From Macrostomum lignano (lineage: Eukaryota), in contig NIVC01000094.1 in the NCBI GenBank assembly GCA_002269645.1, positions 1,054,001-1,118,000 on the forward strand: DNA of 64,000 nt. Direction: 5' to 3'. The notes under the pieces are model-generated. The model saw only the letters and a list, made by a program, of their open reading frames with translations. It searched no databases and was not told where the DNA came from. Both the position numbers and the translations under genes were made by a program. Of the stretch, positions 1 to 32,507 are shown piece after piece (positions within the stretch are counted from its first letter, which is position 1; each line of letters opens with the position of its first letter).

Positions 1-13
1 TTATGCCGCGCAG

Positions 14-3268: not shown

Positions 3269-3991
3269 TCAGCTAGCCGAAGTTTTCCCCGACGCGGACT
3301 CAGCAGCCGCCGAGGCCCGCAGTTGCTCGCCCATTGCCCGAAACCGATTGGCCAGAGCTTCATCTCTCGGGCCGCAGTCGCCTCTGGCGTAGGCCGTGGC
3401 CGCGTTGAAGCAGCCGTTGGCGTAGCCCAGCTCGCAGGCGCGCACGGCAAAGCGCAGCGACTCCGGCAGATCGCGCGGCTTATCCGGCGCTTCAATCATG
3501 TGCAGGGCGGACAGGTGAAAGCAGGCGGCGCCGTAGTCGGCCCGACAGGCCTTGTCGAAAGCCTCCAGAGCGCCCGGCAGGTTGGGCGCGTGACTGGCCA
3601 GGGCTTTGGCGTCGATGACGCCCAGACCGAAGCAGCCGGTCGGGCTGTCCAACTCGTGGCAGGCTCGGCTGTAAAATCGGCGCGCCGCGTGGCAGTCCCT
3701 GGCGGCGCCGCCGAGGCCGCGCAGTCGCGCGTTGCCCAGCCGCAGGCAGCTGTCGGCGTGGCGCAACGAGCCGCAGGCGTCGGCAAGCAGGCCGAGGGCC
3801 TCCTCGCGAGGCTCCTTGGCGCGCTGCTGCAGGAGGGCGTCAGCCAGGTGGTAAGCGGACTGACCGGCTGCGGCCAGCCTGCTGGCGTCGCTGCTGCCGC
3901 CTTCCACGCGCCGTCGGGCCTCGGCGTAGATGGAGCGCAGCTCCTCCAGCGACTCAGTTGGCGCCGACTGCGTGTGAGGTGTCGGCGACTT
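3269..3991 (-). CDS. COA7: Cytochrome c oxidase assembly factor 7 (Sel1-repeat protein); single coding exon starting at a splice acceptor, no in-frame ATG
   Basis: Cys-rich Sel1-like repeats (HADSCLRLG, FYSRACHELDSPTGCFGLG, AFDKACRADYGAACFHLS, FAVRACELGYANGCFNAA, GDCGPRDEALA) match the COA7 layout. Acceptor tgtcgcag|AAG at 3991 is phase 0; in-frame TAG upstream at 4033-4031. Confidence 0.8.
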   Translation of the reverse strand, partial: KSPTPHTQSAPTESLEELRSIYAEARRRVEGGSSDASRLAAAGQSAYHLADALLQQRAKEPREEALGLLADACGSLRHADSCLRLGNARLRGLGGAARDCHAARRFYSRACHELDSPTGCFGLGVIDAKALASHAPNLPGALEAFDKACRADYGAACFHLSALHMIEAPDKPRDLPESLRFAVRACELGYANGCFNAATAYARGDCGPRDEALANRFRAMGEQLRASAAAESASGKTSAS

Positions 3992-4131
3992 CTGCGACAA
4001 ATTGGTTACTTGCTGATGATTGGCGCGGCTCTAATCTAGTAGCTTGGCAGCTCTAATCTTATCTGATGTCTCTAATCTTATGAGTAAAAACAAGCCTAAA
4101 TTAAAGATTAGATGAACACGGGTCTATTGAC

Positions 4132-4425
4132 ATATCTAATCTCATGGGTAAGCAGGAGTCTGAAAGATCTAATCTCATGGGTAAACAGCAATCTAATGGC
4201 AGAGCTAATCTCATTGGTAAACAGCAATCTAATGGCAGATCTAATCTCATAGGTGAACAGCAATCTAATGGCAGATCTAATCTCATAAGTAAACAGCAAT
4301 CTAATGGCAGATCTAATCTTATAGGTAAACAGCAATCTAATGGCAGATCTAATATCATAGGTAAAGAGCAATCTAATGGTAGATCTAATCTCATAGGTAA
4401 ACAGCAATCTAATGGCAGATCTAAT
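4132..4425. repeat. 36-bp minisatellite, left part (interrupted by the LTR element)
   Basis: Unit ATCTAATCTCATAGGTAAACAGCAATCTAATGGCAG. Confidence 0.95.
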
Positions 4426-4699
4426 TGTTGGGCCTAGTGCGTGGGGTTGGGGTGCGCTTTTACTCCGTGTATTGTTTGTGTTCTTAACTCTGTGCGTGTA
4501 CTCATGGTCCGTGGCTCACGCTTTTTGCACGTCTCTGCTTTATCGTGATTTTAATGTACGTTGTTGGTGTTTTAGCCCTGGGGTGGGGGTGGCTACTATT
4601 GAACCTCGCTTGTAATAAATCGTATCGTTGGTTGTCGGTGCTCTTGGCACTTTCGTCTTGTCTCGCATACTCTCAGCTCATGACTTGTTCATTTCAACA
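4426..4699 (+). repeat. 5' LTR (274 bp)
   Basis: TGTTGG...TCAACA; matches the 3' LTR apart from 6 substitutions and a 34-bp extra segment before AATAAA (hand alignment). Confidence 0.97.
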
Positions 4700-4702
4700 T
4701 TT

Positions 4703-4720
4703 TGGCGTCGCGAGCAGGAT
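4703..4720 (+). promoter_or_regulatory. Primer-binding site, probably tRNA-Ser
   Basis: TGGCGTCGCGAGCAGGAT; its reverse complement ATCCTGCTCGCGACGCCA resembles a tRNA 3' end with a G discriminator, as in tRNA-Ser. Confidence 0.75.
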
Positions 4721-4726
4721 CTACAG

Positions 4727-7700
4727 ATGTCTATAAAGCTACGAGACTCACTGCCTCTCAACAACATTGAAGAGTTGCGGGCATGGATCGAGGTCTTTGA
4801 CGCCCAGGCGCGATCAAAAGGAGTGAAGGACACCGATCGCACTGATGACACAGCCGGCAATCTGGCGTTGACCGATGCCTTCCTTGGCTGCCTTGGCGTG
4901 GCACAGCTCATCAAAGTGAAGCAGCTGGTCGCGCCCAAACCGCTCTCGCAGATGAAGTGGGCGGAAATCAAGGAGTGCCTCGTGAGGTTTCTGGAGCCCA
5001 AGAAGAGGCTGTTGATTGCCGAGAGAGCGGCTTTCATGTCCATGCGCCAAGGAGACGGCGAGACGGTTGCCGGCTTCGCTGCCCGACTTCAAGAGCAGGC
5101 GGTGGTGTGCGAATTCGAGAAGCTGAAGGGCGAGAATGTTGATCCAGCTGAGCAGCTGATCAAAATGCGCCTCATCGCCGGTCTCAGCAACCAGGAGGTC
5201 CGGAGCAAGGTTCTCGAGCGCGAAGTCTCCGCAGAGCTCTCGGTGAGCCAGATCACCGAGTACGTGCAGCAACTTCAGATGGTGAGCAAATTTTCGTTCG
5301 GGCCACTGACTGCTCCGGCCAAGCTGAAGGAGACTCGGCGGTGCATCAGGCATCGCCCGCTAGCCAGGAGGTGCCAGAAGAGGATTCTGCTGGTGCCAAT
5401 AGCATCAACGCGGCTGAGATGGTGAGGCCCAGAGCCGGTGGAGGCCAGAGCTGCCAGCGCTGCGGCCAGGCGCAACATAGCAGACCGACAGACTGCCGGG
5501 CCCTGAAGGTCACCTGTCACAAGTGCGGGAAGACTGGCCACTTCGCGAAGGTCTGCCGGAGTGCCAGGAACCACTTTGTCGCACCCAACGAATCCAAGCA
5601 CTCTGACTCAGCCGTGACCAGAGACGAGCCGGTTTTCTACTGCGGTGCGGGCACCCCTGCTGCACTCTGCGATGTGAAAATCAACAGAAGGCAGGTCAAA
5701 ATGGAAAAGGACAGCGGCGCCTCGTGCTCACTAATCTCGAGAAAGATCTGGGAAGAACTCGGCAGGCCGCCACTGAAGTCGCCCAAGTCTCGGATGCTGG
5801 CCTACGACGGGCACGTGATGAAGCAGCTCGGCATCCTGGAGTGTCTGGAGACTGGCGGCCCTGATGGCCGCTTCGCTGCGGCGGAGCTGCCCGTCATCGA
5901 ATGCGAGCAGAATTTCGGGTTGCTCGGCCGGGATCTGCTCAGCTCGCTGCCAGCTCACCACTCAGATGAGGCCAAGCCGCCCAGCAACAACAGGTACGAG
6001 AGCTTGTTGGGCATCAAGGGAGCAGTTGGCGAGATCCTGTTGAAGGCGGGAGCCAGGCCGATTTTCCAACCAGCCAGAGAGCTGCCGCTGGCGCTGCGTC
6101 CACTGGTGAAGAAGGAGCTGGACCTGATGGAGAAGGCGGGCATAGTTGAGAAGGTGACGTCCTCAGAGTGGGGCAGCTCCATAGTGGTGACGGTGAAATC
6201 CGACAAGATGTCTGTGAGGATCTGCGGAGACTACACTGCTGTCAATCATTGGGTGCAGGACCAGACGTACTTGACTCCGTCCGTCGAGACAGCCTTCTCA
6301 AAGATGGGAAACAAGAAGTTGTTCTGCCGACTGGATTTATCTGACGCTTATTATCAGGTTCCGCTGGAAAATGAGTCAAAAGACATCACCACGATCAACA
6401 CCCCTTTCGGCTGCTACCGCTTTAACAGGCTGCCGTACGGCATCAGGTTTCTCCGTCTGTGTTCCAGCGCGAGATGGAGAAGCTGCTGGGTGAGCACCCA
6501 AGTGTACCAGGATGATGTGCTCATGGGAGCGGTGTCAAAGGCGGAGCTGCAGAATATCAGAGAGAAGGTGCTGGACAAGCTGAGGGCAGCTAATGTGAAA
6601 ATCAACGAAGCGAAGTGCATTTTGGAGGCCAGAAGCCTAAAGTTCCTGGGCCACATCATCGATGAAGAGGGGATCAAGCCGGATCCGGGAATGGTGCAGA
6701 AGATTCAGGATGTGGAGGCTCCAAAAAGCAAGAAGGATCTAGAGCGGTTTCTGGGCTTGGCGCAGTTCTATGGTCGGTTGGTTCGCAACTTTGCTGAGAA
6801 GTGTCGGCCTCTGCAGGAACTTCGTCGAGCGGACCGTGTGTTTGACTGGAGTGCGGCTGCCGAGGCAGCGTTCACCAATGTGAAGCAGAGCCTGAGCTCG
6901 AATCCGTGTGTGAAACCGTTTGACGTCAACTCGCCGGTGTGTCTGCGGGTGGATGCTAGCGAGCAGTCTCTGGGCGCTGTGCTGGTGCAGTCAGGGCACC
7001 CAGTCATGTACCTCTCTCGGGCGCTGACCAAGTCTGAGGCCAACTACTCCAACATTGAGCGGGAGGCTCTGGCCATTGTCTGGGCGGTGGAGCGAGCCCG
7101 CAAGATGCTCCTGGGGAAGAGGTTCACGCTCCAGACTGACCACGAGCCACTGAAGTACATCTTCAATCCCAGCAAGAACCTTCCTAAAACAGTGTCGGCA
7201 AGACTAACTCGCTGGGCCCTGTATGTGCCAGGAAGACTGATGGTGGATGCGGATGCCTTATCTCGTTTGAGTTTTGCTGCCCAAGACCCTCCAAGTGACG
7301 CCGTGCACCAGCTGGAGCATGAAGAGGTCGTGTCAGAAGGAGCTCTTGTGACTCTGCAGGATCTTCGTGAGGGAACCAGGATGTGCGCGTTGATGAAGCG
7401 GCTGCAGCAGAGGATCAGAACAGGCCGGTGGGGCCAGGTGTCGCAGGTGGAGAGGCTGTACAAAGCGTGCCGGGAGGCGCTGTCGGTGGAAGACGGTCTG
7501 GTGATCCACGGAACCAGAATTGTGCCCCCACCTGTTCTCCGCAGGCGCATTCTGGAGGTGGCGCACGACGAGGTGCATCCGAGCAACGACAACACCAAGG
7601 CGCACATCTCCAAGGAGTTCTGGTGGCCGGGTCTCGATCGCGATGTTCGCAGCTTTGTGGAGCGCTGCCAGCAGTGCTCAGAAACTCGGCCAGTCCTGCA

Positions 7701-8544
7701 GCGGAGAATCGACACCTGGCCAGCCGAGAGTGAGCCGTGGTCCCGGGTTCACATGGACCATTGTGAGATTTCTGGTGTCGGCCTGCTACTGCTACTGTCG
7801 GACTCCTACTCCGGGTGGCCTGAGGCGATTCAGGTGCCAGACCGAACTGCGGACAGTGTCCTGCGGGTTCTGAGAGCGGTATTTGCCAGGAACGGAGTGC
7901 CTCGGACGCTGGTGTCGGACAATGCGCCGGAGTTCAAGTCGGAGAAAGTGTCCCAGTGGCTGCGCAGCATCGGGTGCCAGGAGCTGCACACTCCACCGTA
8001 CCATCCGGCCTCGAACGGTCAGGCAGAAAGGCTGGTGAGGATCATCAAGGATAGACTCAAGGCGTGGACGAAGATGGTGCCGTTCGATCACTTCCTGCAG
8101 AAACTGCTGCTGACGATCAGGACCAGCCGGCCCAGTGGAAATTGAGCGGCATCTCCGGACGTTCTGATGTGGGGTCGTCGCCTTCGCCACCCGCTAACCA
8201 TGACTGAGTAGGTGGGCGATCCAATCTGGCTGAGGATGCGTCCGGGATTTTCGCCGGTTCCGGCCAAGTTCGTGGTGCAGCACGGCCAGAACACGGCGCT
8301 GGTAGCCCCTGCGGACCAATCGGACGGCGGCCTGCGGCTGGCGCACTCGAATCAGTGGACCGGCCGGCCGAGTGCGCCTGGGTCGCCTGAGGGGGCCAAA
8401 CCTGAGGCGGAGTTGCCGGAGCAGCTTCCTGGCGCAATGGTTGAGCACCTTCCTGATCCGGAACCAACGGTGGCGCCAATGAACAGTGGCCAGCGAGAGC
8501 CGTACGAGCTTCGGCCTTGCCAGCCTGTCTGCTTTAAAGTATAG
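4727..8544 (+). pseudogene. Disrupted gag-pol polyprotein
   Basis: ATG at 4727. Motifs: CHKCGKTGHFAKVC knuckle, DSGAS protease, LDLSDAYYQ/YQDD RT, VDAS/YSNIEREALA RNase H, H..H..C..C and HMD/SDN/NGQAE integrase. Lesions: frameshift near 5310-5340, a compensated frameshift pair near 6450-6505, an apparent ~10-codon deletion in RNase H (RWALYVPG), in-frame stops at 8143 and 8209. Confidence 0.9.
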
Positions 8545-8607
8545 TGACTCTTTGTGACTGTACTTGACTCTGATTTTGTTCTTGTGGTTTCAGTCTTTGT
8601 TTGCTTT

Positions 8608-8621
8608 GGCGGGGGGGGCAG
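8608..8621 (+). promoter_or_regulatory. Polypurine tract
   Basis: GGCGGGGGGGGCAG directly before the 3' LTR. Confidence 0.8.
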
Positions 8622-8861
8622 TGTTGGGCCTGGTGCGTGGGGTTGGGGTGCACTTTTACTCCGTGTATTGTTTGTGTTCTTAACTCTGTGCGTGTACTCA
8701 TGGTCCGTGGCACACGCTCTTTGCACGTCTCTGCTCTATCGTGATTTTAATGTACATTGTTGGTGTTTTAGCCCTAATAAATCGTATCGTTGGTTGTCGG
8801 TGCTCTTGGCACTTTCGTCTTGTCTCGCATACTCTCAGCTCATGACTTGTTCATTTCAACA
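8622..8861 (+). repeat. 3' LTR (240 bp)
   Basis: Matches the 5' LTR but lacks its 34-bp segment. Confidence 0.97.
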
Positions 8862-9135
8862 CTAATCTCATAGGTAAACAGCAATCTAATGGCAGATCCA
8901 ATCTCATTGGTAAACAGCAATCTAATGGCAGATCCAATCTCATTGGTAAACAGCAATCTAATGGCAGATCAATCTCATTGGTAAACAGCAATCTAATGGC
9001 AGATCCAATCTCATTGGTAAACAGCAATCTAATGGCAGATCTAATATAATAGGTAAACAGCAATCTAATGGCAGATCTAATCTCATAGGTGTACGGCAGT
9101 CTAATCGCAGATCTAATCTCATAGGTAAATTGGTG
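8862..9135. repeat. 36-bp minisatellite, right part
   Basis: Same unit as 4132-4425, resuming in register after the TSD. Confidence 0.95.
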
Positions 9136-9650
9136 CACCTGAAGCAATCTAATTTAATATTAAAACTTTAAATGGAACCACAAGGAAAAGTCATTGACCT
9201 CATAATTATGAAAATCGCAAAGTTTATTAAAACAATGTAAAAATCTAATTAAGAAGTGAACCTTCGAATGTACATGTATTGTACTGAGTTTAAGGCATTG
9301 TTTAGCATGGTGTACAACAGGCATTTAGGCCAACTTTAAAACCTCGCACAGCATAATTTAATGACTGGAGTAAAATGTCAATAAGGAATCGGTGATTTAA
9401 AAGTAAAGCAAATTTATAATCTGCCATATTCAAAGTATATGGATAAACACTTCCAAAGGGCCAATGGAAGCGTTCTTAATAATATAATATAATGATTATA
9501 GCTGTTTATATCTCCACGCATTATTGATAGTTAATTGTGTAATGATTGAGCGCAATTTTAATGCTACAATACATACATATACTACTCATACCGTAGGGAA
9601 GTAAGTAGCTGCAACCATCTTTCAGTAGCTTTGTTTGACATCAACTGGCA

Positions 9651-9900
9651 TAGCTACTGACACTATAACTGACACAGCTACTGACACTATAACTGACACA
9701 GCTACTGACACTTTAACTGACACAACTACTAACACTATAACTGACACAGCTACTGACACTTTAACTGACACAACTACTGACATTATAACTGACACAGCTA
9801 CTGACACTTTAACTGACCCAGCTACTAACACTTTAACTGACACAGCTACTAACACTTTAACTGACACAGCTACTGACACTATAACTGACACAGCTACTGC
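9651..9900. repeat. 24-bp minisatellite (GCTACTGACACTATAACTGACACA)
   Basis: ~10 tandem copies read directly. Confidence 0.95.
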
Positions 9901-10028
9901 CTGGCACAGCTTCTGTAATAGCTTCACATAAAGCACAGCTTCTGTAACAGTTTCACATAAAACTGACACTAAAGCTGCATCATTTGAAATCGAATATCAT
10001 CTACAAACGGCTACAAACAGTTAGCAAA

Positions 10029-13000
10029 TCAATTCAAATTGTGCTTCTCCCGCAGCTGCCACGCCATCTCGAGCAGTTTCAGCCGCTCATCGGCATCATC
10101 AATATGATAGGCAGCCAGATCGGCCAGTGACAAACGGCTGGGCGCGCTCACCACGTTCGGGAACTGGGTGTGGCCCGGCAGCGCCCTGTGCGTGTCCCTG
10201 AACACCCGGTCAGCAATGGCGTTCAGCAGCCTCCAGGGCAGGAGCTCCTCCCGGCGTTCCTGCTCGCTTCGCTCCGAGCTGCAAGCGCTGCGCAGGCAGC
10301 TAAGGAGGGCGCGAACTCCGAATGAGCCCGAGCTGCTGCCGGCCAGAGCTACCTGGCTGGCGCCGGCTGAGTACAACCGGAAATAGTCCGGACTCTCCAG
10401 GATCTGCGGGAAGGGGCGGACTCTTCAGGCTAATATTGCCTGTGTCTAACCTGATCTACTAATCTGCATTTCTCTCCTAACCCCCCATTCCTCTCCTAAT
10501 CCCCCATTCCTCTCCTAATCCCCAAATTCCTCTCCTAATCCCCAATTACTCTCCTAATCCCCAATTCTACGTAATAAGTCTACTCAATCCTCAACCCGGA
10601 GATAAGCAGCGGATTCGGCAGCCAGCGACGCACCGGCAGGCTGGGCGCGACTCCCATCGTCAAGTTGTCGGCAGTTCGGCAGGCGTCGTAGAAGCCGAGC
10701 AGGAGGCGCCGGCCGCTCTGCTGGTGCACCGGCAGCGCCTCGAACAGCGGCCTGACCAATTCGGCGTCGATATCGACGGAGCCGCCGCCGGGCAGCACGA
10801 ACAGGTTGCGACCGATGGTGTTGGCGTCCTGGCTGGACACCGACAGCTCGCCGTGGCCGTCCACCAGCAGTAGCGCCTGCACCGGGTGGCCTTCGGTGGT
10901 TTTGAATTGGATAAAGTTTTGCATTGGCCTTAAGTTGTAAACGAGACCGATAAGTTATAATAGGTAGTAAAGAAACACCAGGATACATATCGGCAATAAA
11001 TACAGTTTCGATACATATCGGCAATAAATACAGTTTCGATACATATCGGAAATCAATACAGTTTCGATACATATCGGCAATCAATACAGTTTCGATACAT
11101 ATCGGCAATCAATACAGTTTCGATACATATCGGCAATCAATACAGTTCCGATACATATCGGCAATAAATACAGTTTCGATACATATCGGCAATCAATAGT
11201 TTCGATACACATCAGCAATCAATACAGTTCCGATACATATCGGCAATAAATACAGTTTCGATACATATCGGCAATCAATACAGTTTCGATACATATCGGC
11301 AATCAATACAGTTTCGATACATATCGGAAATCAATACAGTTTCGATACATATCGGCAATAAATAGTTTTGGTACATATCGGCAATCAATAGTTTCGATAC
11401 ATATCGGCAATAAATAGTTTTTATACATATCGGCAATCAATAGTTTCGATACATATCGGCAATAAATAGTTTTTATACATATCGGCAATAAATAGTTTCA
11501 ATACATATCGGCAATCAATAGTTTCGATACATATCGGCAATAAATATTTTCGATACATATCAGTAATAAATACAGTTTCGATACATATCGGCAATTAATA
11601 CAGTTTCGATAAATATCGGGAATCAATGCAGGTTCGATACATATCGGTCAGGAAAATTCGAAAACTAGACGGACAGCTGAAAGTACTAACAATCGCTGCC
11701 GCCAGCTTCCCTCAGCAATTCGCAGAAGTCGGCAACCACGGCCAGCAGGGCTTCCTTGGCGTCGCCGGAGTCGCCGCGGGCCCAGTCGCAGCAGACGATT
11801 GTCTGGTAGCCCAGCAGTTGCAGAGCGCCCGCTACCTGGCGCAGTTCGCCGGGCACGCATGGCAGATCGCCGCACTCGTAGCGACTGGCGCCAATGAGAA
11901 GGGCGAACTTGCGCCACGCCGGCTGAGCGACCGTGACCAGGCGATTAGCCGCGAATATCGAGAAGAAATCCGTGAGCATCACGAGGTCTGATAAGCGGGT
12001 CCTAGTAGCCGAGACCTGGAATGTTAAATATGACCATGTTAAGTGACGGATTTTGTAAAACCTGTTTATGATCGGAAATCTGATCTATGACCAGAAAAAA
12101 TCTATATGACCAGAAAGCCTATCTATATGACCAGACAGCCAATCTATATGACCAGAAAGCCGATCTATATGACCAGAAAGCCTATCTATATGACCAGAAA
12201 GCCGATCTATATGGTCAGACAGCCTATCTATATGATCAGACAGCCTATCTATATGATCAGACAGCCTATCTATATAATCAGACAGCCTATCTAAATTATC
12301 ATCAGACAGCCTATCTATATGATCAGACAGCCGATCTATATGATCAGACAGCCTATCTATATGATCAGACAGCCTATCTATATGATCAGACAGCCTATCT
12401 ATATGATCAGAAAGCCTATCTATATGATCAGACAGCCTATCTATATGATCAGACAGCCGATCTATATGATCAGACAGCCTATCTATATGACCGGGAAGCC
12501 AATCCTTGCGACCAGAAAGTCTATCTGTTACCAGAATGTCGTATGACATAGCTCATGCACAGAACGCTGACCTGCAGTTCAGGCAGCTGCTCCTGGTACC
12601 GCTCCGCTATCTCCCTGATGGACTTCGACACCCCAGTGAGGAAGCTGTCCACCTGCAGTCGTCCCTCGTCGCACAGGTGCTGGCGCAGCTGCGAATTCAA
12701 AGCCGAAATGCCGAACGACTGTCGATTCCGGTTGTGCCTGGCGCTGTCCAGCACGGCAGCCGCGGCGCTGCCGTAGCTGGTGGCGTGCAAGCGGTGGATC
12801 TGGCTGCCACGAACTGTCACGCCGAGGTCTCCGCCCAGGTGCACAGACGGGCAGCTGGCAATACGGCACATGTCCATCATCACCACTAGAAGGCCTTTGT
12901 CGCTGCTGTCATCGCATGCCGGTTGCCTGCGACCAGCCGACATCGCGTGATTGCCAGGCAGGCAGTCGGCCAGAGGCTTGAGGAAGTCCTCCTCGACACG

Positions 13001-16921: not shown

Positions 16922-16980
16922 GAGAAAAGCAGAAACAATGGCCAGATGCTCAAAGTCACGAGCGCAACAGCAAGGAGCCC

Positions 16981-17268
16981 TCAGTCCCACTTGGACCGCG
17001 GCCTGGCGGGAGCGCCTTGCTGGCCAGCGGCACTGTCAAGATTCTCCTGGCGCACATTCATGTAGGCCAGGAAAGCGGCGCAGCAGGTCAGAGCGGCCGT
17101 GCCAATCAGCATCACGGTTTTGTTCGGCTTGGTGTACAGCTCGTAGTTCAACGCCCGAAACATCGGCGAGGTCTTCAGGCCCGAGAGACCGCCGCCGCTG
17201 CTGCCGCCACCTCCTCCTCCAGGTTGATGCAGCTGGCCAGACTGCGCCCGCGGCGGATCTTGGCTTGA
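16981..17268 (-). CDS. SMIM8: Small integral membrane protein 8; single coding exon starting at a splice acceptor, no in-frame ATG
   Basis: GLSGLKTSPMFRALNYELYTKPNKTVMLIGTAALTCCAAFLAYMNVRQEN...RSKWD* matches SMIM8 ([24 protein letters not shown]...SKWD). Acceptor tttccag|TCA at 17268 is phase 0; upstream in-frame TAA at 17349-17347. Confidence 0.88.
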   Translation of the reverse strand, partial: SSQDPPRAQSGQLHQPGGGGGGSSGGGLSGLKTSPMFRALNYELYTKPNKTVMLIGTAALTCCAAFLAYMNVRQENLDSAAGQQGAPARPRSKWD

Positions 17269-17483
17269 CTGGAAATTCGAATTTAAAAAAATTAACACGC
17301 ATTGGTCGTTTTTTGGCCTACTAAAAGTAGTGCGAACGAAAAAAATTTAAGCTACGAGCTAATAGCTATATTTTTATAGCGAAACTGTGGTATCAAATAT
17401 ATATTAATATATGAAAACTCGTATACCTCTTTTACCAAGACAAAATGTTTACCTATAATAAAATATACTAAAAAGGTAATGTC

Positions 17484-17617
17484 CAGTGGCGTAGCTCAAG
17501 GTGGGCTGGGGGGTCATGAGCCCTCCAGACGACGACAGACCAGACAGATCACTATAGCTACTATGACTCCGGCTCGTGACCCCCCCCCCCAAGATGAAAA
17601 TCCTGGCTATGCCGCAG
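17484..17617. mobile_element. hAT-like MITE (134 bp)
   Basis: Ends CAGTGGCGTAGC / GCTATGCCGCAG form an imperfect TIR (3 mismatches); 8-bp flanks GTAATGTC / GTAATGCC (7/8) fit a hAT target-site duplication. Confidence 0.7.
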
Positions 17618-17785
17618 GTAATGCCAACCCTTTATATTAGCACATTAGAGATTAAAAATCTAATTGATTGAAGCATAAGTCCCAGTAGATTAAGGAAACC
17701 ATTTTCAATACACTGTATATTTTGTAAATGCTCAAATGCATAAATAAACGAGTATTAACGGGTTAAATAGTCATAAATCGCGTAT

Positions 17786-20700
17786 TTAGGTGAGCCTGTC
17801 GTCCAGACTCTGAATCTCGCCATTGGACAATTCGGCAACAAGTTGAGCAGGTTGAAAATCAAAGTGCTGATGCTTCAGTACCTGCCAAATTTGGTTGGAA
17901 ATCGAAAGTTCTGTTTATACTAATATAAGTAGTATTATTGCAATATTTTCCGTCCATACCTCGTTACCCCAGCTGGACCAGCCAGGTGTGAGATTTCTGG
18001 CAAACAGTTCGAGGCATCGATAATCGTCTGAGCCAAACAGTGCGTTGAGCAGCGCTGTGGGCAAGGGATTTTATGGCTCTATCAGATGATAGTGCAACTC
18101 ATATTTTCATTTCCTATCGGTAGAAACCTCCTCCAATTAGAGCAATGGCCATCGACAATTATCACCTGTATGCATCACACTCACCCTTACACCGGACTAA
18201 TTAGAGCAATAGCCACCCAATAATTATCACCTGTATATTACTCACCCTTATCTGGACTAATTAGAGCAATAGCCACCCAATAATTATCACCTGTATATTA
18301 CTCACCCTTACCTGGACTAATTAGACCAATGGCCACCCAATAATTATCACCTGTATATTACTCACCCTTACCTGGACTAATTAGAGCAATAGCCACCCAA
18401 TAATTATCACCTGTATATTACTCACCCTTACCTGGACTAATTAGAGCAATAGCCACCCCATAATTATCACCCGTGTACATTGCTCATCACTACACCTGAC
18501 CAACTACCTAATACCCTACTAATAATCGGAGCAATAATGCCGGACTTAAATAACTCACGCTTCAAACACGGCTTCCTTGAGTGCAGGCAAGACGGCACGG
18601 ACATCAGAGTGAGCTCGGCGGGCACGCGTTTATAAACGTCGGATGACGCTGCAAGCTGGGCGGGCGCCAGCACGTAAAGCCGTTCGAAAGGCCGGCGAAA
18701 TCTGCTGTGCAGTGGGGTCAGCGGTCGCCCCGTAGCGGTCACCTGCTCAAGAGTCAGCGGAATGGGCAGCTTCTGCGAATACTTTTATTACTGTTAACTA
18801 TGTCGATCGAACCGGCTGACCCACCTTGACCCACAGCCAACGGCCGATGCAGCGCAGGCCCCAGGCAGCGGTCAGGTCTTCTAGCACGCAGCGCACATGC
18901 TTCAGCGAGTTGGTGCACCAGACCAGCACCAGAGGCCCCGGCCACCCCTTCGCTCCTCCCCCTGACTGTTCAGCTCGATGACGCAGCAACTCCGGCACGG
19001 GTATTCGCGACAGAAGCTCGAGCCCGATGGACTCAGCGGCAGAATAGACTCCGCGCCTGCGTGCCGACGCGTTTGGCCAGGGCGGGTCGGCCAGCACAAC
19101 GTCGTAGGGCCCGTCCGATGAGCTCAGCTGGAGCAGCAGAGGCTTGGCGCTGCACAACTGTGAGATGGCGAACGAGCTGCGAGCCGGCACAGCATAGCAA
19201 CCACCTAGCAGACGAACTGCTCGCCGTTGGCTGACGCTGGGCTCAACAAGAGCAACCCGGCCGAGACGGCAAGCGTCGGCCAGAGCAGCGCCCGGGCCGC
19301 AGTCGGTGCCAGAGTTGAACAGCTCAAACAGGGCCGTCTGGCTCTCAATGCCGCAGATTGAGCGAAGCTGGCCAGCCTCAGTTGGCGTCAGGAAGCTGAC
19401 CAGCCCGGACTGAGTAGCTAGGGACAGCCGGCCTTCAATTGATGATACTGAGAATGCGGACTGGGCAAACCGGGTGATGGACGAGTTTGTCCTTTATAAG
19501 TACACTGAGTTCTTTTATTTATTAGGATCATTTATTATTATTATTAGAGGCAGGGGGGTTGTGTGCACCCTGGCGCACTTTAAGCGACATAGGCACACAA
19601 CCGGCGAGAGGCATTACTGCCCATTCCGCCGACTCCCCTGAGCAGGCACACAAGCGCGCGGATACGTACGCAGGCACACACTCACACAGGAGTGTACAGC
19701 GGCCCTAACTTTATATTATCGTTAGGCATGTACACTTCACTGCGCCTTGGGGGGTTGGCTCTCAAGGCCGTTAATTGCACGAGCAGAGCCAAGCCGAAAT
19801 TCCAATTCAGCCCCAAATTAATGTGACTGCATTTGGAATCGAGCTTGGGTCGCTGGCACACCAGAGCCTGCGCTAGACCGCTGGGCTACGGCCCCCCCTA
19901 TTAGGATCATACTCTGAGGATTATAGGGGATTCCAGCACTAGTTTGAGGATTATAGGGGATTCCAGCACTAGTTTGAGGATTATAGGGGATTCCAGCACT
20001 AGTTTGAGGATTATAGGGGATTCCAGCACTAGTTTGAGGATTATAGGGGATTCCAGCACTAGTTTGAGGATTATAGGGGATTCCAGCACTAGTTTGAGGA
20101 TTATAGGGGATTACAACACTATTTTGAGGATTATAGGGGATTCCAGCACTAGTTTGAGGATTATAGGGGATTCCAGCACTAGTTTGAGGATTATAGGGGA
20201 TTCCAGCACTAGTTTGAGGATTATAGGGGATTCCAGCACTAGTTTGAGGATTATAGGGGATTCCAGCACTAGTTTGAGGATTATAGGGGATTCCAGCACT
20301 AGTTTGAGGATCTTTGGGGATTATAGCACTATTTTGAGGATTATAGGGGATTCCAGCACTAGTTTGAGGATTATAGGGGATTCCAGCACTAGTTTGAGGA
20401 TCTTTGGGGATTATAGCACTATTTTGAGGATTATAGGGGATTTCAGCACTAGTTTGAGGATCTTTGGGGATTACAGCACTAGTTTGAGGATCTTTGGGGA
20501 TTACAGCACTAGTTTGAGGATCTTTGGGGATTCCAGCACTAGTTTGAGGATCTTTGGGATTCCAGAACTAGTTTGAGGATCTTTGGGGATTACATCACTA
20601 GTTTGAGGATCTCTGGGGATTACAGCACTAGTTTGAGGATCTCTGGGGATTACAGCACTACTTTGAGGATCTCTGGGGATTACAGTACTAGTTTGAGGAT

Positions 20701-21161
20701 CTCTGGGGATTACAGCACTACTTTGAGTATATTTAAGGATGACAGGGCTAATTTAAGGATCTTTGGAATGATAGCACTGCCTTGGGGATCTCGTTTTGGC
20801 AGCACTATACTTAAATAAATGGATTATAGAGCCTACATCATCAGACTCGCCACTGTCCGTGTGATCTTCTACGAAACCAGCCGCAGCGGCCTTGCGTTTC
20901 CTTGATTTGGCAGGTTTTTCACGTTCGGGCTCTACAAACACAGACAAGAATTATTGTGTGCATTGAATATACATACTATTCTACTGATTCATTCTATTCA
21001 GTAGCGAATGCGTATATCTTACCATTGTTATACAGCGGATCTAGAATAAGATATTCCAAGTCGGATATTGATTTTGCTTCCTTCAAGTTCCGAAGATGCC
21101 GGAGGGTCTGACGCAGGAAAGTCGTCTCCAGCTGCAGCCTGGCATCGCTGGAAGCTTCTGC
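17786..21161 (-). CDS. METTL4: METTL4 (MT-A70 family N6-adenine methyltransferase); exons 21161-21023, 20931-20837, 19460-18825, 18742-18559, 18054-17960, 17881-17786; start codon not in this model
   Basis: YAVPARSSF, YDVVLADPPW, LVWCTN, WLWVK|VT, SVPSCLHSRKP, CLELFARNL..GWSSWGNE|VLKHQH match METTL4. Splice phases are consistent (1,0,0,1,0). The two upstream exons are less certain (KRK basic patch, phase fit). Confidence 0.85.
18140..18478. repeat. 60-bp minisatellite in a METTL4 intron
   Basis: Unit CTCACCCTTACCTGGACTAATTAGAGCAATAGCCACCCAATAATTATCACCTGTATATTA, ~5.5 copies. Confidence 0.95.
19912..20730. repeat. 30-bp minisatellite (TTTGAGGATTATAGGGGATTCCAGCACTAG) in a METTL4 intron
   Basis: ~27 copies, near-identical at the left and diverging to the right. 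Confidence 0.97.
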
Positions 21162-21240
21162 CTGAAAGTTTGCGCACCGGGACTTGTGAGCTCTCGAAAG
21201 ATTAGGAATCCCATCATTGTAAATCGAGGGTGGCAGTGAC

Positions 21241-22487
21241 CCAGTCTGGGGGTGCTGAGGACCAGTCTGAGGATCCGAGAGGGTGCTGAGGACCAGCCTA
21301 AGGATCCGAGAGGGTGCTGAGGACCAGCCTAAGGATCCGAGAGGGTGCTGAGGACCAGCCTAAGGATCCGAGAGGGTGCTGAGGACCAGCCTAAGGATCC
21401 GAGAGGGTGCTGAGGACCAGTCTAAGGATCTGAGAGGGTGCTGAGGACCAGCCTAAGGATCCGAGAGGGTGCTGAGGACCAGCCTGGGGATCCGAGAGGG
21501 TGCTGAGGACCAGTCTGAGGATTCGAGAGGGGCTGAGGATCCGAGAGGGTGCTGATGACCAGTGTGGGGATCCGAGAGGGTGCTGAGGACCAGCCTAAGG
21601 ATCCGAGAGGGTGCTGAGGACCAGCCTAAGGATCCGAGAGGGTGCTGAGGACCAGCCTAAGGATCTGAGAGGGTGCTGAGGACCAGCCTAAGGATCTGAG
21701 AGGGTGCTGAGGACCAGCCTAAGGATCCGAGAGGGTGCTGAGGACCAGCCTAAGGATCCGAGAGGGTGCTGAGGACCAGCCTAAGGATCTGAGAGGGTGC
21801 TGAGGACCAGTCTGAGGATCCGAGAGGGGCTGAGGATCCGAGAGGGTGCTGAGGACCAGTCTGGGGATTCGAGAGGGTGCTGAGGACCAGCCTGGGGATC
21901 CGAGAGGGTGCTGAGGACCAGCCTGAGGATCCGAGAGGGTGCTGAGGACCAGCCTGGGGATCCGAGAGGGTGCTGAGGATCAGCCTGGGGATCCGAGAGG
22001 GTGCTGAGGACCAGTCTGAGGATTCGAGAGGGGCTGAGGATCCGAGAGGGTGCTGATGACCAGTGTGGGGATCCGAGAGGGTGCTGAGGACCAGTCTGAG
22101 GATCCGAGAGGGTGCTGAGGACCAGTCTGGGGATTCGAGAGGGTGCTGAGGACCAGCCTGGGGATCCGAGAGGGTGCTGAGGACCAGCCTGGGGATCCGA
22201 GAGGGTGCTGAGGACCAGTCTGAGGATTCGAGAGGGGCTGAGGATCCGAGAGGGTGCTGATGACCAGGGTGGGGATCCGAGAGGGTGCTGAGGACCAGTC
22301 TGAGGATCCGAGAGGGTGCTGAGGACCAGTCTGGGGATTCGAGAGGGTGCTGAGGACCAGCCTGGGGATCCGAGAGGGTGCTGAGGACCAGCCTGGGGAT
22401 CCGAGAGGGTGCTGAGGACCAGTCTGAGGATCCGAGAGGGGCTGAGGACCAGCCCGAGAATCCGAGAGGGTGCTGAGGACCAGCCTT
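21241..22487. repeat. 31-bp minisatellite (GAGGACCAGCCTAAGGATCCGAGAGGGTGCT) with periodic shorter variant units
   Basis: Read directly; lies between CIR1 and METTL4. Confidence 0.95.
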
Positions 22488-23060
22488 AAGAATCATCATC
22501 ACAGAATCACTTTTGAGTTTTGAACTTGAATAAGCAGCCCAAGTAAAACTACAAGAAGTGCAACGAAATTGTTTGAAAACCAAGAATAAATTATATTGAA
22601 TCTCATACAGATCCGTATTTGAGTATGCACTGTTCGCAAACAAGCGCGGACAACAAACATTAAACCACTGACAGGGTTTTGTCTATATATTTGATTGATA
22701 AAAACTTTGAAAAACAATCAGCAAGCATGTACACGGTTGCATAACACGGCCGATAAATAAATGAGAGTTGTAAGAAAGCTTATTTACTATGTACAAAAGT
22801 AAAATGAAGTTATAAGTTCTTTCAACACATTATTAAAACAAGATTAGGTAGCAGCCGCCTCTCCGTCACAGACATACTTGACTCATTAAAAAGTCACTTG
22901 CATCGCCCCAGAGTCACTAGGGAGTTATTTGCAGCGACTATTTAGCAATTCTTGCCAAAGGTATCATCGTTTTCAACGGGGGAGAATAGTTAAGAAAACA
23001 AGACAGAAGCAAAATCATCTCAGACAGGAATTAAACAGTTAGCGAATTCGTACTGCAAAC

Positions 23061-26000
23061 TCAGCGCTCCTTACGGCGCCTCCTGTCCTTTTCTTTTTTC
23101 TCTTTCTTTTCCTTCTTGTGCTTCTTGTGCTTCTTCTTGCCGCCGTCTCGGTCGCTTTTGCCCGACTCCAGCTTCTCGAGCTTCTTCATCAGCTTCTCGC
23201 GCTGGGCAGGCGTCAGCGAGCGAAAGAAGGCCTCAACCTCGGCTTCGCTGCTGGCCGATGCGCCGCCGCCGGCGACGACTTCGTTGTAGCCGGAGGCCTC
23301 GGCCCGGCGGGTGAAGCGCAGGTGCTGCTCGTCGCGCATGTGCCGGCCGGCGTCGCCAAGATGAGAGTCGGGCAGCTGCGGCTCCATGGTGATGGACTTG
23401 CCATACAGCGGGCACAGCCGGTCGGTGTTCACGTGGCCCCAGCTGTGGCATTTCACGCAGCGCACGTTGCGCACCTCGATGCCAAACGGCTGGTCGCGGA
23501 CCTCGTCGCTGCCTTTGCAGTAGGCCTCTCTGGGCGCCTGGAATTTGCGCTGCCATTCGAAGCGAACCTCGCGAGCCTCGCTGGGGCCGGCCTCCTCCTG
23601 CGGGACCGGGGGGTGTGATTGGTTAGATTAGCTAATTAATAGAGTTCCACTGTAGCTATGGATAATAGCTACGGAAACTTATGGATATGGTTAAGTCCCT
23701 GAGGTTGAGGACTCAATATTTGTAATCCCATATTCACATGATGTTAAGGTAATTGTTAAGATGAATGTTTTCACTTTCAATGCGATGAGGTCTTAAATGT
23801 GAATTTTAATGATAATTGCATCAATACAATGTTCTATTGCGAAGCAGTGGAAAAGCAATAAATATTAATTCAGTAAATTATTCACTTAAGAACTGATTTA
23901 AATGCCATTTCAAGATATAACCAAGATGCTTTTTGACACCAATATACTGCTTTGCCTGCATCAAAAAAGTGTAAACTTCAATCACTGCTATCCAGACCAG
24001 ACACAGACTGTCTCGAAACTTTAGCAAAACCCCTTAATTCATTTTAGCAAACTTTTATACCAAAGGACCTTATATTACTAAAAAACCTATCACTAAAATG
24101 ACCATGCCCATAAAAATTATAGGAAGCAAACAAAAACTCATTATATCCCAGACTCTGGATGGTATTAGTACATAAGGGGCCTAGTATATCCTTTGGTATA
24201 TAGCCTGGCATGCAGAGATTGCCAAGAAAGCAAGTGGGACCAAAGTTTCAAGTCAATGTAATCAATGTATATACTTAGTATACAAAATGACTAAGTTCAA
24301 CTTTGGCATAGTCTTTATATGCATAGTTATAGTTATAGTAGCTAAATTTTGATCAAAAAGAATAGCTCCTATGGATCTTTAAAAGTTATTAACAAAAAAC
24401 AAAATAAAAAATCATGTTTAATTCTATATTTTTAATTCTATATTCCAGAAGGTATATATTATGTCATGCCAGAATTTCTAGTATATATTTGGTTTGGCCA
24501 AAAAAATTGGCATGCCTTTTGGTTAAGCAAAAAATAAGGTATGCTATGCCATGGAATAGCTTGATAGCATATAATATAATATAGTATGATCATAGTGGGG
24601 CAGTGTTTTTGAGTTTTGGAAAATACTTATAAATATATTTTATCCTGTTTATTTTTACTAGAAATACCAAAGAGTACCGAAAAAATTTATAATTTAATTT
24701 AATGCTTATGCCTATAGTTATAAATTTTTAAAGCTTTGTTTTTTCTTGTGCATTTTTAAAATATAATTTTTGCATATATTTTTGCTTTTTTGTGGGGCTA
24801 TTGTTAATTATTTCAATGGTATATGTGGCATAAAGTTGGTAAACATGGCATGCAATAGGTGTACAAACAAAAAATGCTAGGTATATATTCTAGCAAGCAA
24901 TTAACATGATCTAGAATATGGCAAAAATGGTTAAAAGATAGTTCTTCATGGTTTAGTATAAAAATAACCAATTTTTACTAATGATTTTTTGGCAATCCTC
25001 TAGTTTTGTATGGTAAATTATTTTTATTGAAAATGATAACCTTTAAATAACTTTCAGCTTGATAAGTGGTGAGATAGATAATAGAGAACAAATTTAACAT
25101 ATTATCAAATGCCTAGTTTTGTTTAAATATGTATAAATGATATTTTTTTCTAGCTTATCAATAGCTGCCTAACCATGCTATCATCAATTTTTGACTGCAT
25201 TTTGTAAACCCAGTGGACCTAACTATTTACATTAATATTATTGAAGGCACATAGATAGGCTCATGAAAAAAACTAAATTTAGTCTTATATTTTGGCGAAA
25301 ATGTGATCAAAATCAGTCGAGAATTGCAATCTCTAGAGCATTATGGACAAGCATACAAACAAACAAATATTAGAGATTTAGTATATTTAGATTTACATTA
25401 ATATTATTGAAGGCACATAGATAAGCTCATGAAAAAACTAAATTTAGTCTTATATTATAGACTAGTTGAGTCCTACTTATAGAAATACCTTTGGCAGCAC
25501 CAGTTCCTAAACAAGACCTTCAGGAACTTTTTATATACTGGGTATTATATTATTATCAACTTTAACATCCATTAATATTGTTTATATATGTTTAGGGCCT
25601 AAACAAAAGTCTTAAAACAAAAACATAAGTTTAAACAAAACAAAAGGCCTAGGCACTCAATAATATGATAAGTTTGTTCTCTATTATCTATTTTGTTATT
25701 TATTGAGCTTAAAGTTACATAAAAGTTATTATTTTCAACAAAAAATTAAATGTGTCTAAATTATTAAGATGCCTCCATATAATATAAAAATATAAAAAAT
25801 ACATTAGCAATGCTTTATAATGAAATTTTATTATAGACTCTAGTAGTCGAACTAAATGTTTTGACAGATTACGAAAGAAAAAGATAGGTCTAGGTCTAAT
25901 ATATATAACAATGTAAAAAATGTTTACCTTATCAGCACCAGGGGGCCTATCATACATGAAAGCAATTCCAAGCTTTGCTTTTTCATCTCCTAAAATGGCT

Positions 26001-26167
26001 CGAGCTTCAAGCTGCTCTTGCTCTCGACGATAAAGAGCGACTTTTTCTTCTTCCTTTTTTTCCTCGAATTCCTTTTTCTGCTGTGCCATCCATAAACGTT
26101 TAATATTGTCGAAGCTTCCTGGGTGGAAGAACTTCTTGTTCATATAATTTTGATAACCTTTGCCCAT
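23061..26167 (-). CDS. CIR1: Corepressor interacting with RBPJ 1 (exons 26167-25928 and 23597-23061)
   Basis: [31 protein letters not shown]...[11 protein letters not shown]|EEAG...[12 protein letters not shown]...[33 protein letters not shown] matches CIR1; phase-0 GT-AG intron; Lys-rich tail. Confidence 0.95.
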
Positions 26168-32420: not shown

Positions 32421-32507
32421 TTATGGAAATCAATAATTCTGCTTCAGGGCGCTAAAGTGACTGCCTGAAGCGCCAAAATGAGTGCCTAATATAATATAAT
32501 AGTGCCT

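What the first reader, a model, noticed from the sequence alone, without database searches (positions are those of the whole stretch)
3269..26167. Operon-like co-directional cluster in which several genes may depend on trans-splicing for their start codon
Seen: CIR1, METTL4, SMIM8, the paracaspase and COA7 are all on the minus strand, with unique spacers of a few hundred bp to ~1 kb once repeats and the LTR element are removed. The most upstream gene (CIR1) has its own ATG, while three downstream genes lack one and start at phase-0 acceptors. Known: SL trans-splicing resolves polycistronic transcripts in flatworms and nematodes. Inference: a eukaryotic operon where trans-splicing is required for translation, giving a possible regulatory checkpoint and linking an unusual immune protease to housekeeping genes.
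Basis: inference. Interest (0 to 1): 0.7.

Follow-up and report, generated by a model that had tools for sequence, protein, structure and literature searches.

The report
Flatworm operon needing spliced-leader start codons

Summary
The window is Macrostomum lignano assembly Mlig_3_7, contig NIVC01000094.1 (contig coordinate = window + 1,054,000). CIR1, METTL4, SMIM8, a caspase-family protein and COA7 all lie on the minus strand. My exon models reproduce the GenBank proteins exactly.

METTL4, SMIM8 and COA7 have no usable genomic ATG. Each begins at an AG acceptor in phase 0 (21161, 17268, 3991). GenBank marks all four downstream CDSs as 5'-partial. Stop-to-acceptor spacers are 1899, 517, 2176 and 6037 nt. 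They shrink to 662, 517, 1117 and 711 nt once minisatellites and a plus-strand LTR retrotransposon are removed.

The published M. lignano spliced leader ends in ATG. About 30% of its genes are reported trans-spliced and 15% in operons, defined by this same repeat-subtracted rule. A spliced-leader AUG acting as initiator is established in Schistosoma.

The start-codon reading is therefore well supported, though indirectly. The operon reading is supported only for CIR1 and METTL4, which share transcriptional-unit name Mlig001109. SMIM8 probably belongs too. The caspase-family gene and COA7 carry other unit names. No transcript read was available here. The "regulatory checkpoint" idea has no evidence. 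This is a known kind of feature and of low interest.

The parts
25928..26167 (-). CIR1 exon 1, with its own ATG at 26167-26165
   Evidence: Model translates exactly to PAA91176.1 (BOX15_Mlig001109g13, 258 aa). Cir_N Pfam hit, E 9.7e-11.
26186..26187 (-). Acceptor-like AG (ctgtttAG|CGCCC) 18 nt upstream of the CIR1 ATG and in frame with it. It is a possible trans-splice site for the first gene.
   Evidence: Sequence only; no transcript evidence.
23061..23597 (-). CIR1 exon 2, with stop TGA at 23063-23061
21162..23060 (-). Spacer 1, CIR1 stop to METTL4 acceptor: 1899 nt, of which 1237 nt are a 31/62-bp minisatellite (21250-22486)
   Evidence: The same spacer is 1061 nt in two paralogous copies.
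21023..21161 (-). METTL4 exon 1. It starts after aactttcAG at a phase-0 acceptor and holds no in-frame ATG. The only ATG (21146-21144) is out of frame and meets a stop 20 codons later.
17786..20931 (-). METTL4 exons 2-6 (20931-20837, 19460-18825, 18742-18559, 18054-17960, 17881-17786) and their introns. Stop TAA at 17788-17786.
   Evidence: Exact match to 'A' + PAA91175.1 (BOX15_Mlig001109g11, 5'-partial). MT-A70 hit, E 1.5e-27. DPPW motif present.
17269..17785 (-). Spacer 2, METTL4 stop to SMIM8 acceptor: 517 nt, with no repeats
16981..17268 (-). SMIM8, a single exon starting after aatttccAG at a phase-0 acceptor. The first in-frame ATG (17163) lies inside the conserved domain.
   Evidence: DUF4500 hit, E 1.1e-20, covering residues 24-78 of 95. 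The GenBank CDS is an 85-aa 5'-partial starting at 17238.
14805..16980 (-). Spacer 3, SMIM8 stop to the caspase-family gene's acceptor (ttttAG at 14806-14805): 2176 nt, of which 1033 nt are a 21-bp minisatellite (15888-16920)
   Evidence: The spacer is 3181 and 2843 nt in the paralogous copies.
10029..14785 (-). Caspase-family ('paracaspase-like') gene, seven exons: 14785-14165, 14082-13978, 13711-13406, 13081-12572, 12015-11691, 10890-10634, 10403-10029. Genomic ATG at 14785. GenBank CDS starts at 14761.
   Evidence: Exact match to 'MVSALPQQ' + PAA91173.1 (BOX15_Mlig034005g3, 824 aa, 5'-partial). Peptidase_C14 hit, E 1.1e-15.
3992..10028 (-). Spacer 4, caspase-family gene stop to COA7 acceptor: 6037 nt. 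About 711 nt remain after removing the LTR element and tandem repeats (4123-4425, 8864-9129, 9643-9961).
4426..8863 (+). LTR retrotransposon of Ty3/gypsy type, in the opposite orientation to the gene cluster and inserted into a 36-bp satellite. LTRs at 4426-4699 and 8622-8863. Gag ORF 4628-5425, pol ORF 5341-8145.
   Evidence: It is also present in the paralogous contig.
3269..3991 (-). COA7, a single exon starting after tttgtcgcAG at a phase-0 acceptor. The first in-frame ATG is at codon 164.
   Evidence: Matches 'KSP' + the 237-aa GenBank 5'-partial protein. The paralogue is named BOX15_Mlig024831g1. Human COA7 (7MQZ) matches at E 2.5e-23, with query residue 46 aligned to human residue 42.
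1..845 (+). 3' end of a convergent plus-strand gene (399-aa product), which closes the co-directional run

Best explanation
This is a Macrostomum lignano gene cluster of the already described operon / spliced-leader (SL) type.

CIR1 carries its own ATG and heads the cluster. The nearest upstream same-strand gene ends about 10 kb away. METTL4, SMIM8 and COA7 are processed by SL trans-splicing at the acceptors 21161, 17268 and 3991. Because the leader ends in AUG and each acceptor is in phase 0, the leader supplies the initiator methionine. The products would begin M-AEASSD..., M-SSQDPP... and M-KSPTPH.... RNA that is not trans-spliced cannot produce these proteins.

CIR1 and METTL4 are made from one primary transcript, and SMIM8 very probably from the same one. 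The caspase-family gene and COA7 are also trans-spliced, but they may or may not belong to that transcript. The long spacers are short intercistronic regions inflated by minisatellites and one LTR retrotransposon.

Shown here: gene order, strand and exon models; absence of usable ATGs; acceptor phase and motif; spacer composition; the shared unit name for CIR1 and METTL4. Inferred: the actual SL junctions, initiation at the SL AUG, and co-transcription beyond CIR1-METTL4.
For: Species and contig identity. The SL sequence CGGTCTCTTACTGCGAAGACTCAATTTATTGCATG, 30% of genes trans-spliced, 15% in operons, the operon rule (same strand, downstream gene trans-spliced, repeat-subtracted distance below 1 kb) and the acceptor motif [T/C]TNCAG all come from PMC8629364. 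PMC10468722 states that the Macrostomum SL likely contains the final ATG as translation start codon. In Schistosoma mansoni the SL AUG is in frame in 28% of trans-spliced mRNAs and more than 40 cDNAs need it (Cheng 2006, as cited in PMC9851317).

There is no in-frame ATG before conserved coding sequence in METTL4, SMIM8 or COA7, and all three acceptors are in phase 0, two with the exact motif. N-terminal lengths fit the orthologues. GenBank flags all four downstream CDSs as 5'-partial, in three genome copies.

CIR1 is Mlig001109g13 and METTL4 is Mlig001109g11 on this contig. The prefix names a transcriptional unit assembled from RNA-seq, from which genes are cut at SL and poly(A) signals (PMC5730564). 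Two unrelated genes can share a prefix only if some assembled unit contains both. Repeat-adjusted spacers are 662, 517, 1117 and 711 nt from stop to acceptor. Measured from the last poly(A)-like hexamer they are about 200, 100, 700-940 and 160 nt.
Against: No SL-containing read, cDNA, CAGE or poly(A) data could be examined, so every junction is inferred. The annotated 5' ends of the partial CDSs lie 3-30 nt downstream of the proposed acceptors for METTL4, SMIM8 and COA7 (43 nt below the ttttAG acceptor for the caspase-family gene), and they differ between copies (21158 here, against the equivalent of 21134 in the paralogues). They therefore do not pinpoint the junctions.

The caspase-family gene and COA7 carry their own unit names. 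The SMIM8-to-caspase-gene spacer is at or above the 1-kb rule unless the 3' UTR is long. A promoter-bearing LTR retrotransposon lies antisense in the last spacer. The COA7 acceptor (TCGCAG) does not match the published motif exactly. Alternative phase-0 AGs exist nearby (3988, 21131, 17241).
Confidence: 0.62

Rival explanations
1. All five genes form one roughly 23-kb polycistronic primary transcript from a single promoter upstream of CIR1. It requires transcription to read through the antisense LTR retrotransposon.
For: All five genes are co-directional, with no annotated opposite-strand host gene between them. All repeat-adjusted spacers are near or below the published 1-kb criterion. The operon paper notes that RNA-seq transcriptional units tend to break in repeat-rich intergenic regions, so separate unit names do not exclude a single operon. 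Operons of up to nine genes are reported.
Against: The annotation has three different unit prefixes. Spacer 3 is 1117 nt after repeat removal. Spacer 4 holds a 4.4-kb LTR element with long gag and pol reading frames on the other strand. There is no transcript evidence.
Confidence: 0.25
2. The genes are independently transcribed, each from its own promoter, and are merely neighbours. Some or all are monocistronic trans-spliced genes. In M. lignano about 60% of trans-spliced genes are not in operons.
For: PMC8629364 assigns only about 40% of trans-spliced genes to operons. Five genes on one strand is a 1-in-16 coincidence. Raw spacers of 1.9-6 kb leave room for promoters. The caspase-family gene and COA7 have separate unit names.
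Against: CIR1 and METTL4 share a transcriptional unit name. The METTL4-SMIM8 spacer is only 517 nt including the METTL4 3' UTR. The unique sequence left in spacers 1, 2 and 4 after the last poly(A)-like hexamer is only about 100-200 nt.
Confidence: 0.3
3. The missing ATGs are an annotation or assembly gap. Each gene has an unrecognised upstream cis-spliced exon that carries the ATG, or uses a non-AUG start.
For: The acceptors prove only that something is spliced on. An in-frame TTG lies at 4000 upstream of COA7. The annotated 5' ends are imprecise.
Against: Three independent genome copies are all annotated 5'-partial from RNA-seq-guided assembly. Protein lengths from the acceptor already equal those of the orthologues, leaving no room for more than a few extra residues. 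Upstream sequence is minisatellite or outron-like, with in-frame stops at 4033 and 17349. The SL ending in ATG gives a complete explanation.
Confidence: 0.08
4. The ATG-less genes are decaying pseudogene copies in a duplicated, repeat-rich region.
For: The genome is neopolyploid with three copies of this locus, and the region is full of minisatellites and a transposon.
Against: The reading frames are intact across up to seven exons with canonical GT-AG introns. The DPPW, GHG and DMCR motifs are kept. The same intact frames occur in all three copies. METTL4 and COA7 score strongly against orthologues.
Confidence: 0.03

Closest known systems
Macrostomum lignano SL trans-spliced operons (Wudarski et al. 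2017, PMC5730564; Ustyantsev & Berezikov 2021, PMC8629364)
   Same: Same species and genome assembly. Co-directional genes whose downstream members start at [T/C]TNCAG-type acceptors. Spacers are inflated by repeats and fall to under about 1 kb once these are subtracted. CIR1 and METTL4 are already named as genes of one transcriptional unit.
   Different: Five genes would be an unusually long operon: 75% of the reported ones have two genes and 18% have three. One spacer holds a whole antisense LTR retrotransposon. The annotation itself splits the cluster into three units.
Flatworm SL 3'-terminal AUG used as initiator methionine (Schistosoma mansoni; Cheng et al. 2006, J Biol Chem 281:733, as summarised in PMC9851317)
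   Same: The leader ends in AUG. The acceptor is in frame with an ORF that lacks its own AUG. Translation therefore depends on trans-splicing.
   Different: That mechanism was shown experimentally in Schistosoma. Here it is inferred from sequence. For Macrostomum the literature says only that the SL 'likely contains' the start codon (PMC10468722).
Caenorhabditis elegans operons resolved by SL2 trans-splicing
   Same: A polycistronic pre-mRNA is cut into monocistronic mRNAs by 3'-end formation coupled to trans-splicing. The first gene need not be trans-spliced.
   Different: From my own knowledge: nematodes use a dedicated SL2 for downstream genes, have intercistronic regions of about 100 nt, and their leaders do not supply the AUG. 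M. lignano has one reported SL, and here the spacers are kilobases long because of repeats.

Membership tests
M. lignano operon (operational definition of PMC8629364) | Adjacent genes in the same orientation, not interrupted by a transcript in the opposite orientation | tested here: inconclusive
   All five host genes are on the minus strand, with no annotated opposite-strand host gene between them. A plus-strand LTR retrotransposon with gag and pol ORFs lies between the caspase-family gene and COA7. The published method subtracts such repeats.
M. lignano operon (operational definition of PMC8629364) | The downstream gene of each pair is SL trans-spliced (SL-containing reads at its 5' end) | not testable with these tools
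   No RNA reads were reachable. Indirect support only: 5'-partial CDSs in GenBank, a phase-0 acceptor and the published motif.
M. lignano operon (operational definition of PMC8629364) | Repeat-subtracted intergenic distance below 1000 bp | tested here: inconclusive
   Stop-to-acceptor distances after subtraction are 662, 517, 1117 and 711 nt. Three pass outright. SMIM8 to the caspase-family gene passes only if the SMIM8 3' UTR exceeds about 120 nt. The true gene ends are unknown.
M. lignano operon (operational definition of PMC8629364) | Genes derive from one assembled transcriptional unit (precursor RNA) | tested here: inconclusive
   CIR1 and METTL4 share the prefix Mlig001109. The caspase-family gene is Mlig034005 and COA7 is Mlig024831 (named on the paralogous contig). 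The name of SMIM8 was not retrievable.
SL-AUG-dependent ORF (flatworm 'slORF') | The spliced leader of the species ends in AUG | tested here: met
   The published 35-nt SL ends ...TTGCATG (PMC8629364; PMC10468722). This is taken from the literature, not re-derived. No SL RNA gene lies in the window.
SL-AUG-dependent ORF (flatworm 'slORF') | The acceptor is in phase 0 with the ORF, with no stop between them | tested here: met
   Exon starts at 21161, 17268 and 3991 are all in phase 0 and open.
SL-AUG-dependent ORF (flatworm 'slORF') | No genomic in-frame AUG able to give the conserved protein | tested here: met
   Met for METTL4, SMIM8 and COA7. Not met for the caspase-family gene, which has an ATG at 14785.
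SL-AUG-dependent ORF (flatworm 'slORF') | The SL is physically joined at that acceptor and translation starts at its AUG | not testable with these tools
   This needs SL-junction reads, ribosome profiling or N-terminal peptides.
Paracaspase (MALT1-like) | Caspase-like C14 domain with a His/Cys dyad | tested here: met
   PF00656 hit, E 1.1e-15, in two stretches. GHG...DMCR and GHG...DACR motifs are visible in the sequence.
Paracaspase (MALT1-like) | Detectable sequence similarity to MALT1 or other solved paracaspases, plus an N-terminal death domain | tested here: not met
   No PDB match for the whole protein at E<=0.01, and none for the first caspase-like domain even at E<=10. Pfam finds no death domain. 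'Caspase-family protein' is therefore the safe name.

The most novel reading that the evidence does not exclude
All five genes are one roughly 23-kb polycistronic unit whose RNA polymerase reads through a 4.4-kb antisense LTR retrotransposon, and whose four downstream cistrons all take their initiator AUG from the spliced leader. The caspase-family gene would do so through the CAGCAG acceptor at 14761, which bypasses its genomic ATG. Translation of the whole unit would then depend strictly on trans-splicing.
Probability: 0.2. Interest if true: 0.35.

Novelty: already known. Interest (0 to 1): 0.18.

Why it matters
The locus is a clean, compact illustration of two documented flatworm features: operons whose spacers have been inflated by satellites and transposons, and genes that have lost their own start codon and rely on the AUG at the end of the spliced leader.

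Its practical value is for annotation. The four downstream GenBank CDSs are flagged 5'-partial, and UniProt carries fused CIR1-METTL4 and METTL4-SMIM8 models. If the SL-AUG reading is right, the complete proteins for METTL4, SMIM8 and COA7 are obtained simply by placing Met in front of the first codon after the acceptor.

It opens no new question. There is no evidence for a special regulatory checkpoint, or for a functional link between the protease and the housekeeping genes.

Tried and rejected
- A search for the SL sequence or an SL RNA gene in the window found nothing. Rfam gave no hit and ARAGORN found no tRNA.

- I tried to use the annotated starts of the 5'-partial CDSs as exact SL junctions and rejected this. 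For METTL4, SMIM8 and COA7 they lie 3, 30 and 9 nt downstream of the nearest good acceptor. For the caspase-family gene the CDS start directly follows the CAGCAG acceptor at 14761 (offset 0) but lies 43 nt below the ttttAG acceptor at 14804. The METTL4 start also differs between genome copies.

- The third protein-database search, with the N-terminal half of the caspase-family protein, returned nothing. This was probably because Q-rich words swamped the candidate list. The protein was recovered through the representative search instead.

- Two brute-force exon enumerations failed because a 105-nt Ig-like exon (14082-13978) was missing from my first model.

- The gene names Mlig001109, Mlig034005, Mlig024831 and Mlig017808 were sought in the main texts and held supplements of the M. 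lignano genome papers. None was found.

- The UniProt fusion models (CIR1-METTL4, METTL4-SMIM8) were considered as proof of co-transcription. I did not rely on them, because an ab initio predictor would also join ATG-less ORFs in frame.

- The Logan and other transcript-derived proteins in the protein collection held no M. lignano entries for these genes, so no SL-bearing contig could be fetched.

- The bacterial promoter/terminator scan was not used, because it does not apply to a flatworm.

Full report
**Identity of the window.**
The COA7-like ORF (3269-3991, minus strand) is 100% identical to GenBank PAA48080.1, 'BOX15_Mlig024831g1, partial', from Macrostomum lignano. The window's own copy lies on the 1.29-Mb contig NIVC01000094.1 of assembly Mlig_3_7, GCA_002269645.1. 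Loci fetched around three proteins give the mapping contig coordinate = window + 1,054,000. The sequence is repeat-rich. Minisatellites sit in most introns and spacers.

**Checking the observation.**
- Pfam supports the gene identities: Cir_N for CIR1, MT-A70 for METTL4, DUF4500 for SMIM8, Peptidase_C14 for the 'paracaspase' and Sel1 for COA7. Human COA7 (7MQZ) also matches at E 2.5e-23.
- I rebuilt every gene by hand. Each model translates exactly to the GenBank protein of this contig, apart from a short N-terminal extension.
  - CIR1: 26167-25928 and 23597-23061.
  - METTL4: 21161-21023, 20931-20837, 19460-18825, 18742-18559, 18054-17960 and 17881-17786.
  - SMIM8: 17268-16981.
  - Caspase-family gene: seven exons from 14785 to 10029.
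  - COA7: 3991-3269.
- All introns are GT-AG. All five genes are on the minus strand.
- A convergent plus-strand gene ends at 845.
- The next upstream minus-strand gene (533 aa, 36142-37743) ends about 10 kb before the CIR1 ATG. Only about 1 kb of that interval is tandem repeat. CIR1 is therefore plausibly the head of the cluster.

**The missing start codons are real.**
- METTL4: the frame is open for 67 codons upstream of 21161 without an ATG. Exon 1 has no in-frame ATG. The first methionine of the protein lies about 345 residues in, beyond the DPPW catalytic motif. The only nearby ATG (21146) is out of frame and runs into a stop.
- COA7: an in-frame stop lies 14 codons upstream (4033), and the first in-frame ATG is codon 164.
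- SMIM8: an in-frame stop lies 27 codons upstream (17349). The first ATG is codon 35, inside the DUF4500 match that starts at residue 24.
- Acceptors: each ORF begins directly after an AG in phase 0, namely aactttcAG|GCA (21161), aatttccAG|TCA (17268) and tttgtcgcAG|AAG (3991). The first two fit the published M. lignano trans-splice motif [T/C]TNCAG exactly.
- GenBank flags METTL4, the caspase-family protein and COA7 as 5'-partial by name. The SMIM8 CDS is likewise ATG-less, starting GQLHQ at 17238. CIR1 alone is complete.

**Spacers.**

| Pair | Stop to acceptor (nt) | After removing repeats (nt) | What was removed |
|---|---|---|---|
| CIR1 to METTL4 | 1899 | 662 | Minisatellite 21250-22486 |
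| METTL4 to SMIM8 | 517 | 517 | Nothing |
| SMIM8 to caspase-family gene | 2176 | 1117 | Array 15888-16920 |
| Caspase-family gene to COA7 | 6037 | 711 | LTR retrotransposon 4426-8863 and three tandem arrays |

- Counting only from the last poly(A)-like hexamer, the repeat-adjusted gaps are about 200, 100, 700-940 and 160 nt. This last step is inference.
- Two paralogous copies of the locus (contigs NIVC01004243.1 and NIVC01002590.1) keep the same gene order and identical acceptor contexts. They differ in spacer length only through minisatellite copy number: 1061 against 1899 nt, and 3181 or 2843 against 2176 nt.

**What it is.**
- The published 35-nt spliced leader of M. lignano is CGGTCTCTTACTGCGAAGACTCAATTTATTGCATG. 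About 30% of genes are reported as trans-spliced and 15% as lying in operons.
- In Schistosoma mansoni the leader's AUG is in frame in 28% of trans-spliced mRNAs and is required by more than 40 cDNAs (Cheng et al. 2006, as summarised in PMC9851317).
- Placing that ATG in front of the three acceptors gives MAEASSD..., MSSQDPP... and MKSPTPH.... The protein lengths then fit the orthologues, since COA7 residue 46 aligns with human residue 42. Little room remains for a missing coding exon.

**Evidence for co-transcription.**
- In the Mlig_3_7 annotation, a name prefix denotes an RNA-seq-assembled transcriptional unit. Units are clustered at 95% identity. The suffix gN denotes genes cut out of the unit at SL and poly(A) signals (PMC5730564).
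- On this contig CIR1 is Mlig001109g13 and METTL4 is Mlig001109g11. Two unrelated genes can share a prefix only if an assembled unit contains both.
- The name of SMIM8 was hidden. It lies only 517 nt from the METTL4 stop.
- The caspase-family gene (Mlig034005) and COA7 (Mlig024831, named on the paralogous contig) have their own units.
- The operon paper warns that units tend to break in repeat-rich spacers. This neither proves nor excludes a five-gene operon.
- UniProt models from the older assembly fuse CIR1 to METTL4 and METTL4 to SMIM8. The second fusion uses the 17268 acceptor. I treat these as weak evidence, because a gene predictor would join ATG-less ORFs in frame anyway.

**Limits.**
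- No transcript read, CAGE tag or poly(A) tag could be reached. The protein collection holds no transcript-derived M. lignano entries for these genes. The supplements held for the relevant papers do not contain the gene names.
- The annotated partial CDS starts lie up to 43 nt from the acceptors proposed here and differ between copies, so they cannot serve as junction markers.
- One detail is suggestive. In all three copies the caspase-family CDS starts at the equivalent of 14761. That is 24 nt downstream of the genomic ATG and directly after cccgCAGCAG, in phase 0. This gene may also be trans-spliced there and use the leader's AUG.

**Verdict.**
- SL-supplied start codons for METTL4, SMIM8 and COA7 are the best explanation; I put this at about 0.7-0.8.
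- A CIR1-METTL4(-SMIM8) operon is likely, at about 0.6.
- A single five-gene operon is possible but unproven, at about 0.2-0.25.
- The 'regulatory checkpoint' and the functional coupling of an 'immune protease' to housekeeping genes have no support.
- The protease could not even be tied to MALT1 by sequence. No PDB hit appeared, and there were only two hits among 1.84 billion representative proteins.
- Both the mechanism and the architecture are already described for this species, so novelty and interest are low.

Noticed in passing
window 4426-8863 (+): An LTR retrotransposon of Ty3/gypsy type with long gag and pol reading frames. Gag ORF 4628-5425. The 934-aa pol ORF 5341-8145 has protease, RT, RNase H and integrase Pfam hits. 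LTRs at 4426-4699 and 8622-8863 have TG...CA ends and a 34-bp indel. A 5-bp CTAAT target duplication flanks it. It is inserted into a 36-bp satellite and is shared with the paralogous contig, so it predates the duplication.
   Followed up: partly
window 10029-14785 (-): The 'paracaspase' has two tandem caspase-like domains (GHG...DMCR and GHG...DACR) and a 35-aa Ig-like exon (YRCAV motif). It is nearly an orphan: only two hits among 1.84 billion representative proteins, and no PDB hit. Pfam detects no death domain.
   Followed up: partly
window 14761 and the equivalents in L004 (16952) and L005 (16612): GenBank starts the caspase-family CDS 24 nt downstream of the genomic ATG, directly after cccgCAGCAG, in all three genome copies. 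This may be an alternative phase-0 trans-splice site that replaces the genomic ATG with the leader's ATG.
   Followed up: partly
window 23061-23075 and 21157; 17960 and 17268: UniProt models from the older ML2 assembly fuse neighbouring genes. A0A1I8JHM9 joins a GTAAGG donor inside the last CIR1 codons to an AG 4 nt inside METTL4 exon 1. A0A1I8GV94 joins the donor of METTL4 exon 5 to the SMIM8 acceptor. These are either chimeric read-through transcripts or prediction artefacts.
   Followed up: partly
window 26185-26187 (-): An acceptor-like ctgtttAG lies 18 nt upstream of the CIR1 ATG, in frame and with no stop between them. If CIR1 is itself trans-spliced, the leader's ATG would add seven residues.
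   Followed up: no
window 10982-11647, 12100-12490, 13162-13353, 18135-18471, 19915-20727: Most introns of METTL4 and the caspase-family gene carry their own minisatellite arrays (19- to 60-bp units, up to 27 copies). Several keep long open reading frames by chance.
   Followed up: no
window 19800-19900 (-): A tRNA-like stretch (gggggccgtagcccagcggtctagcgc...cgattcc) sits inside METTL4 intron 2. It looks like a tRNA-derived SINE head. ARAGORN does not call a tRNA there.
   Followed up: partly
window 36142-37743 (-): A single-exon, 533-aa, proline/serine/arginine-rich ORF annotated as a gene. It has no Pfam hit, lies on the same strand as the cluster and ends about 10 kb upstream of CIR1.
   Followed up: partly
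window 32505-33015, 45468-48075, 50423-51690, 54536-57919: Very large satellite arrays with strong GC and AT skew. Each is open in several frames over 0.5-3.4 kb. They dominate the half of the window upstream of the cluster.
   Followed up: no
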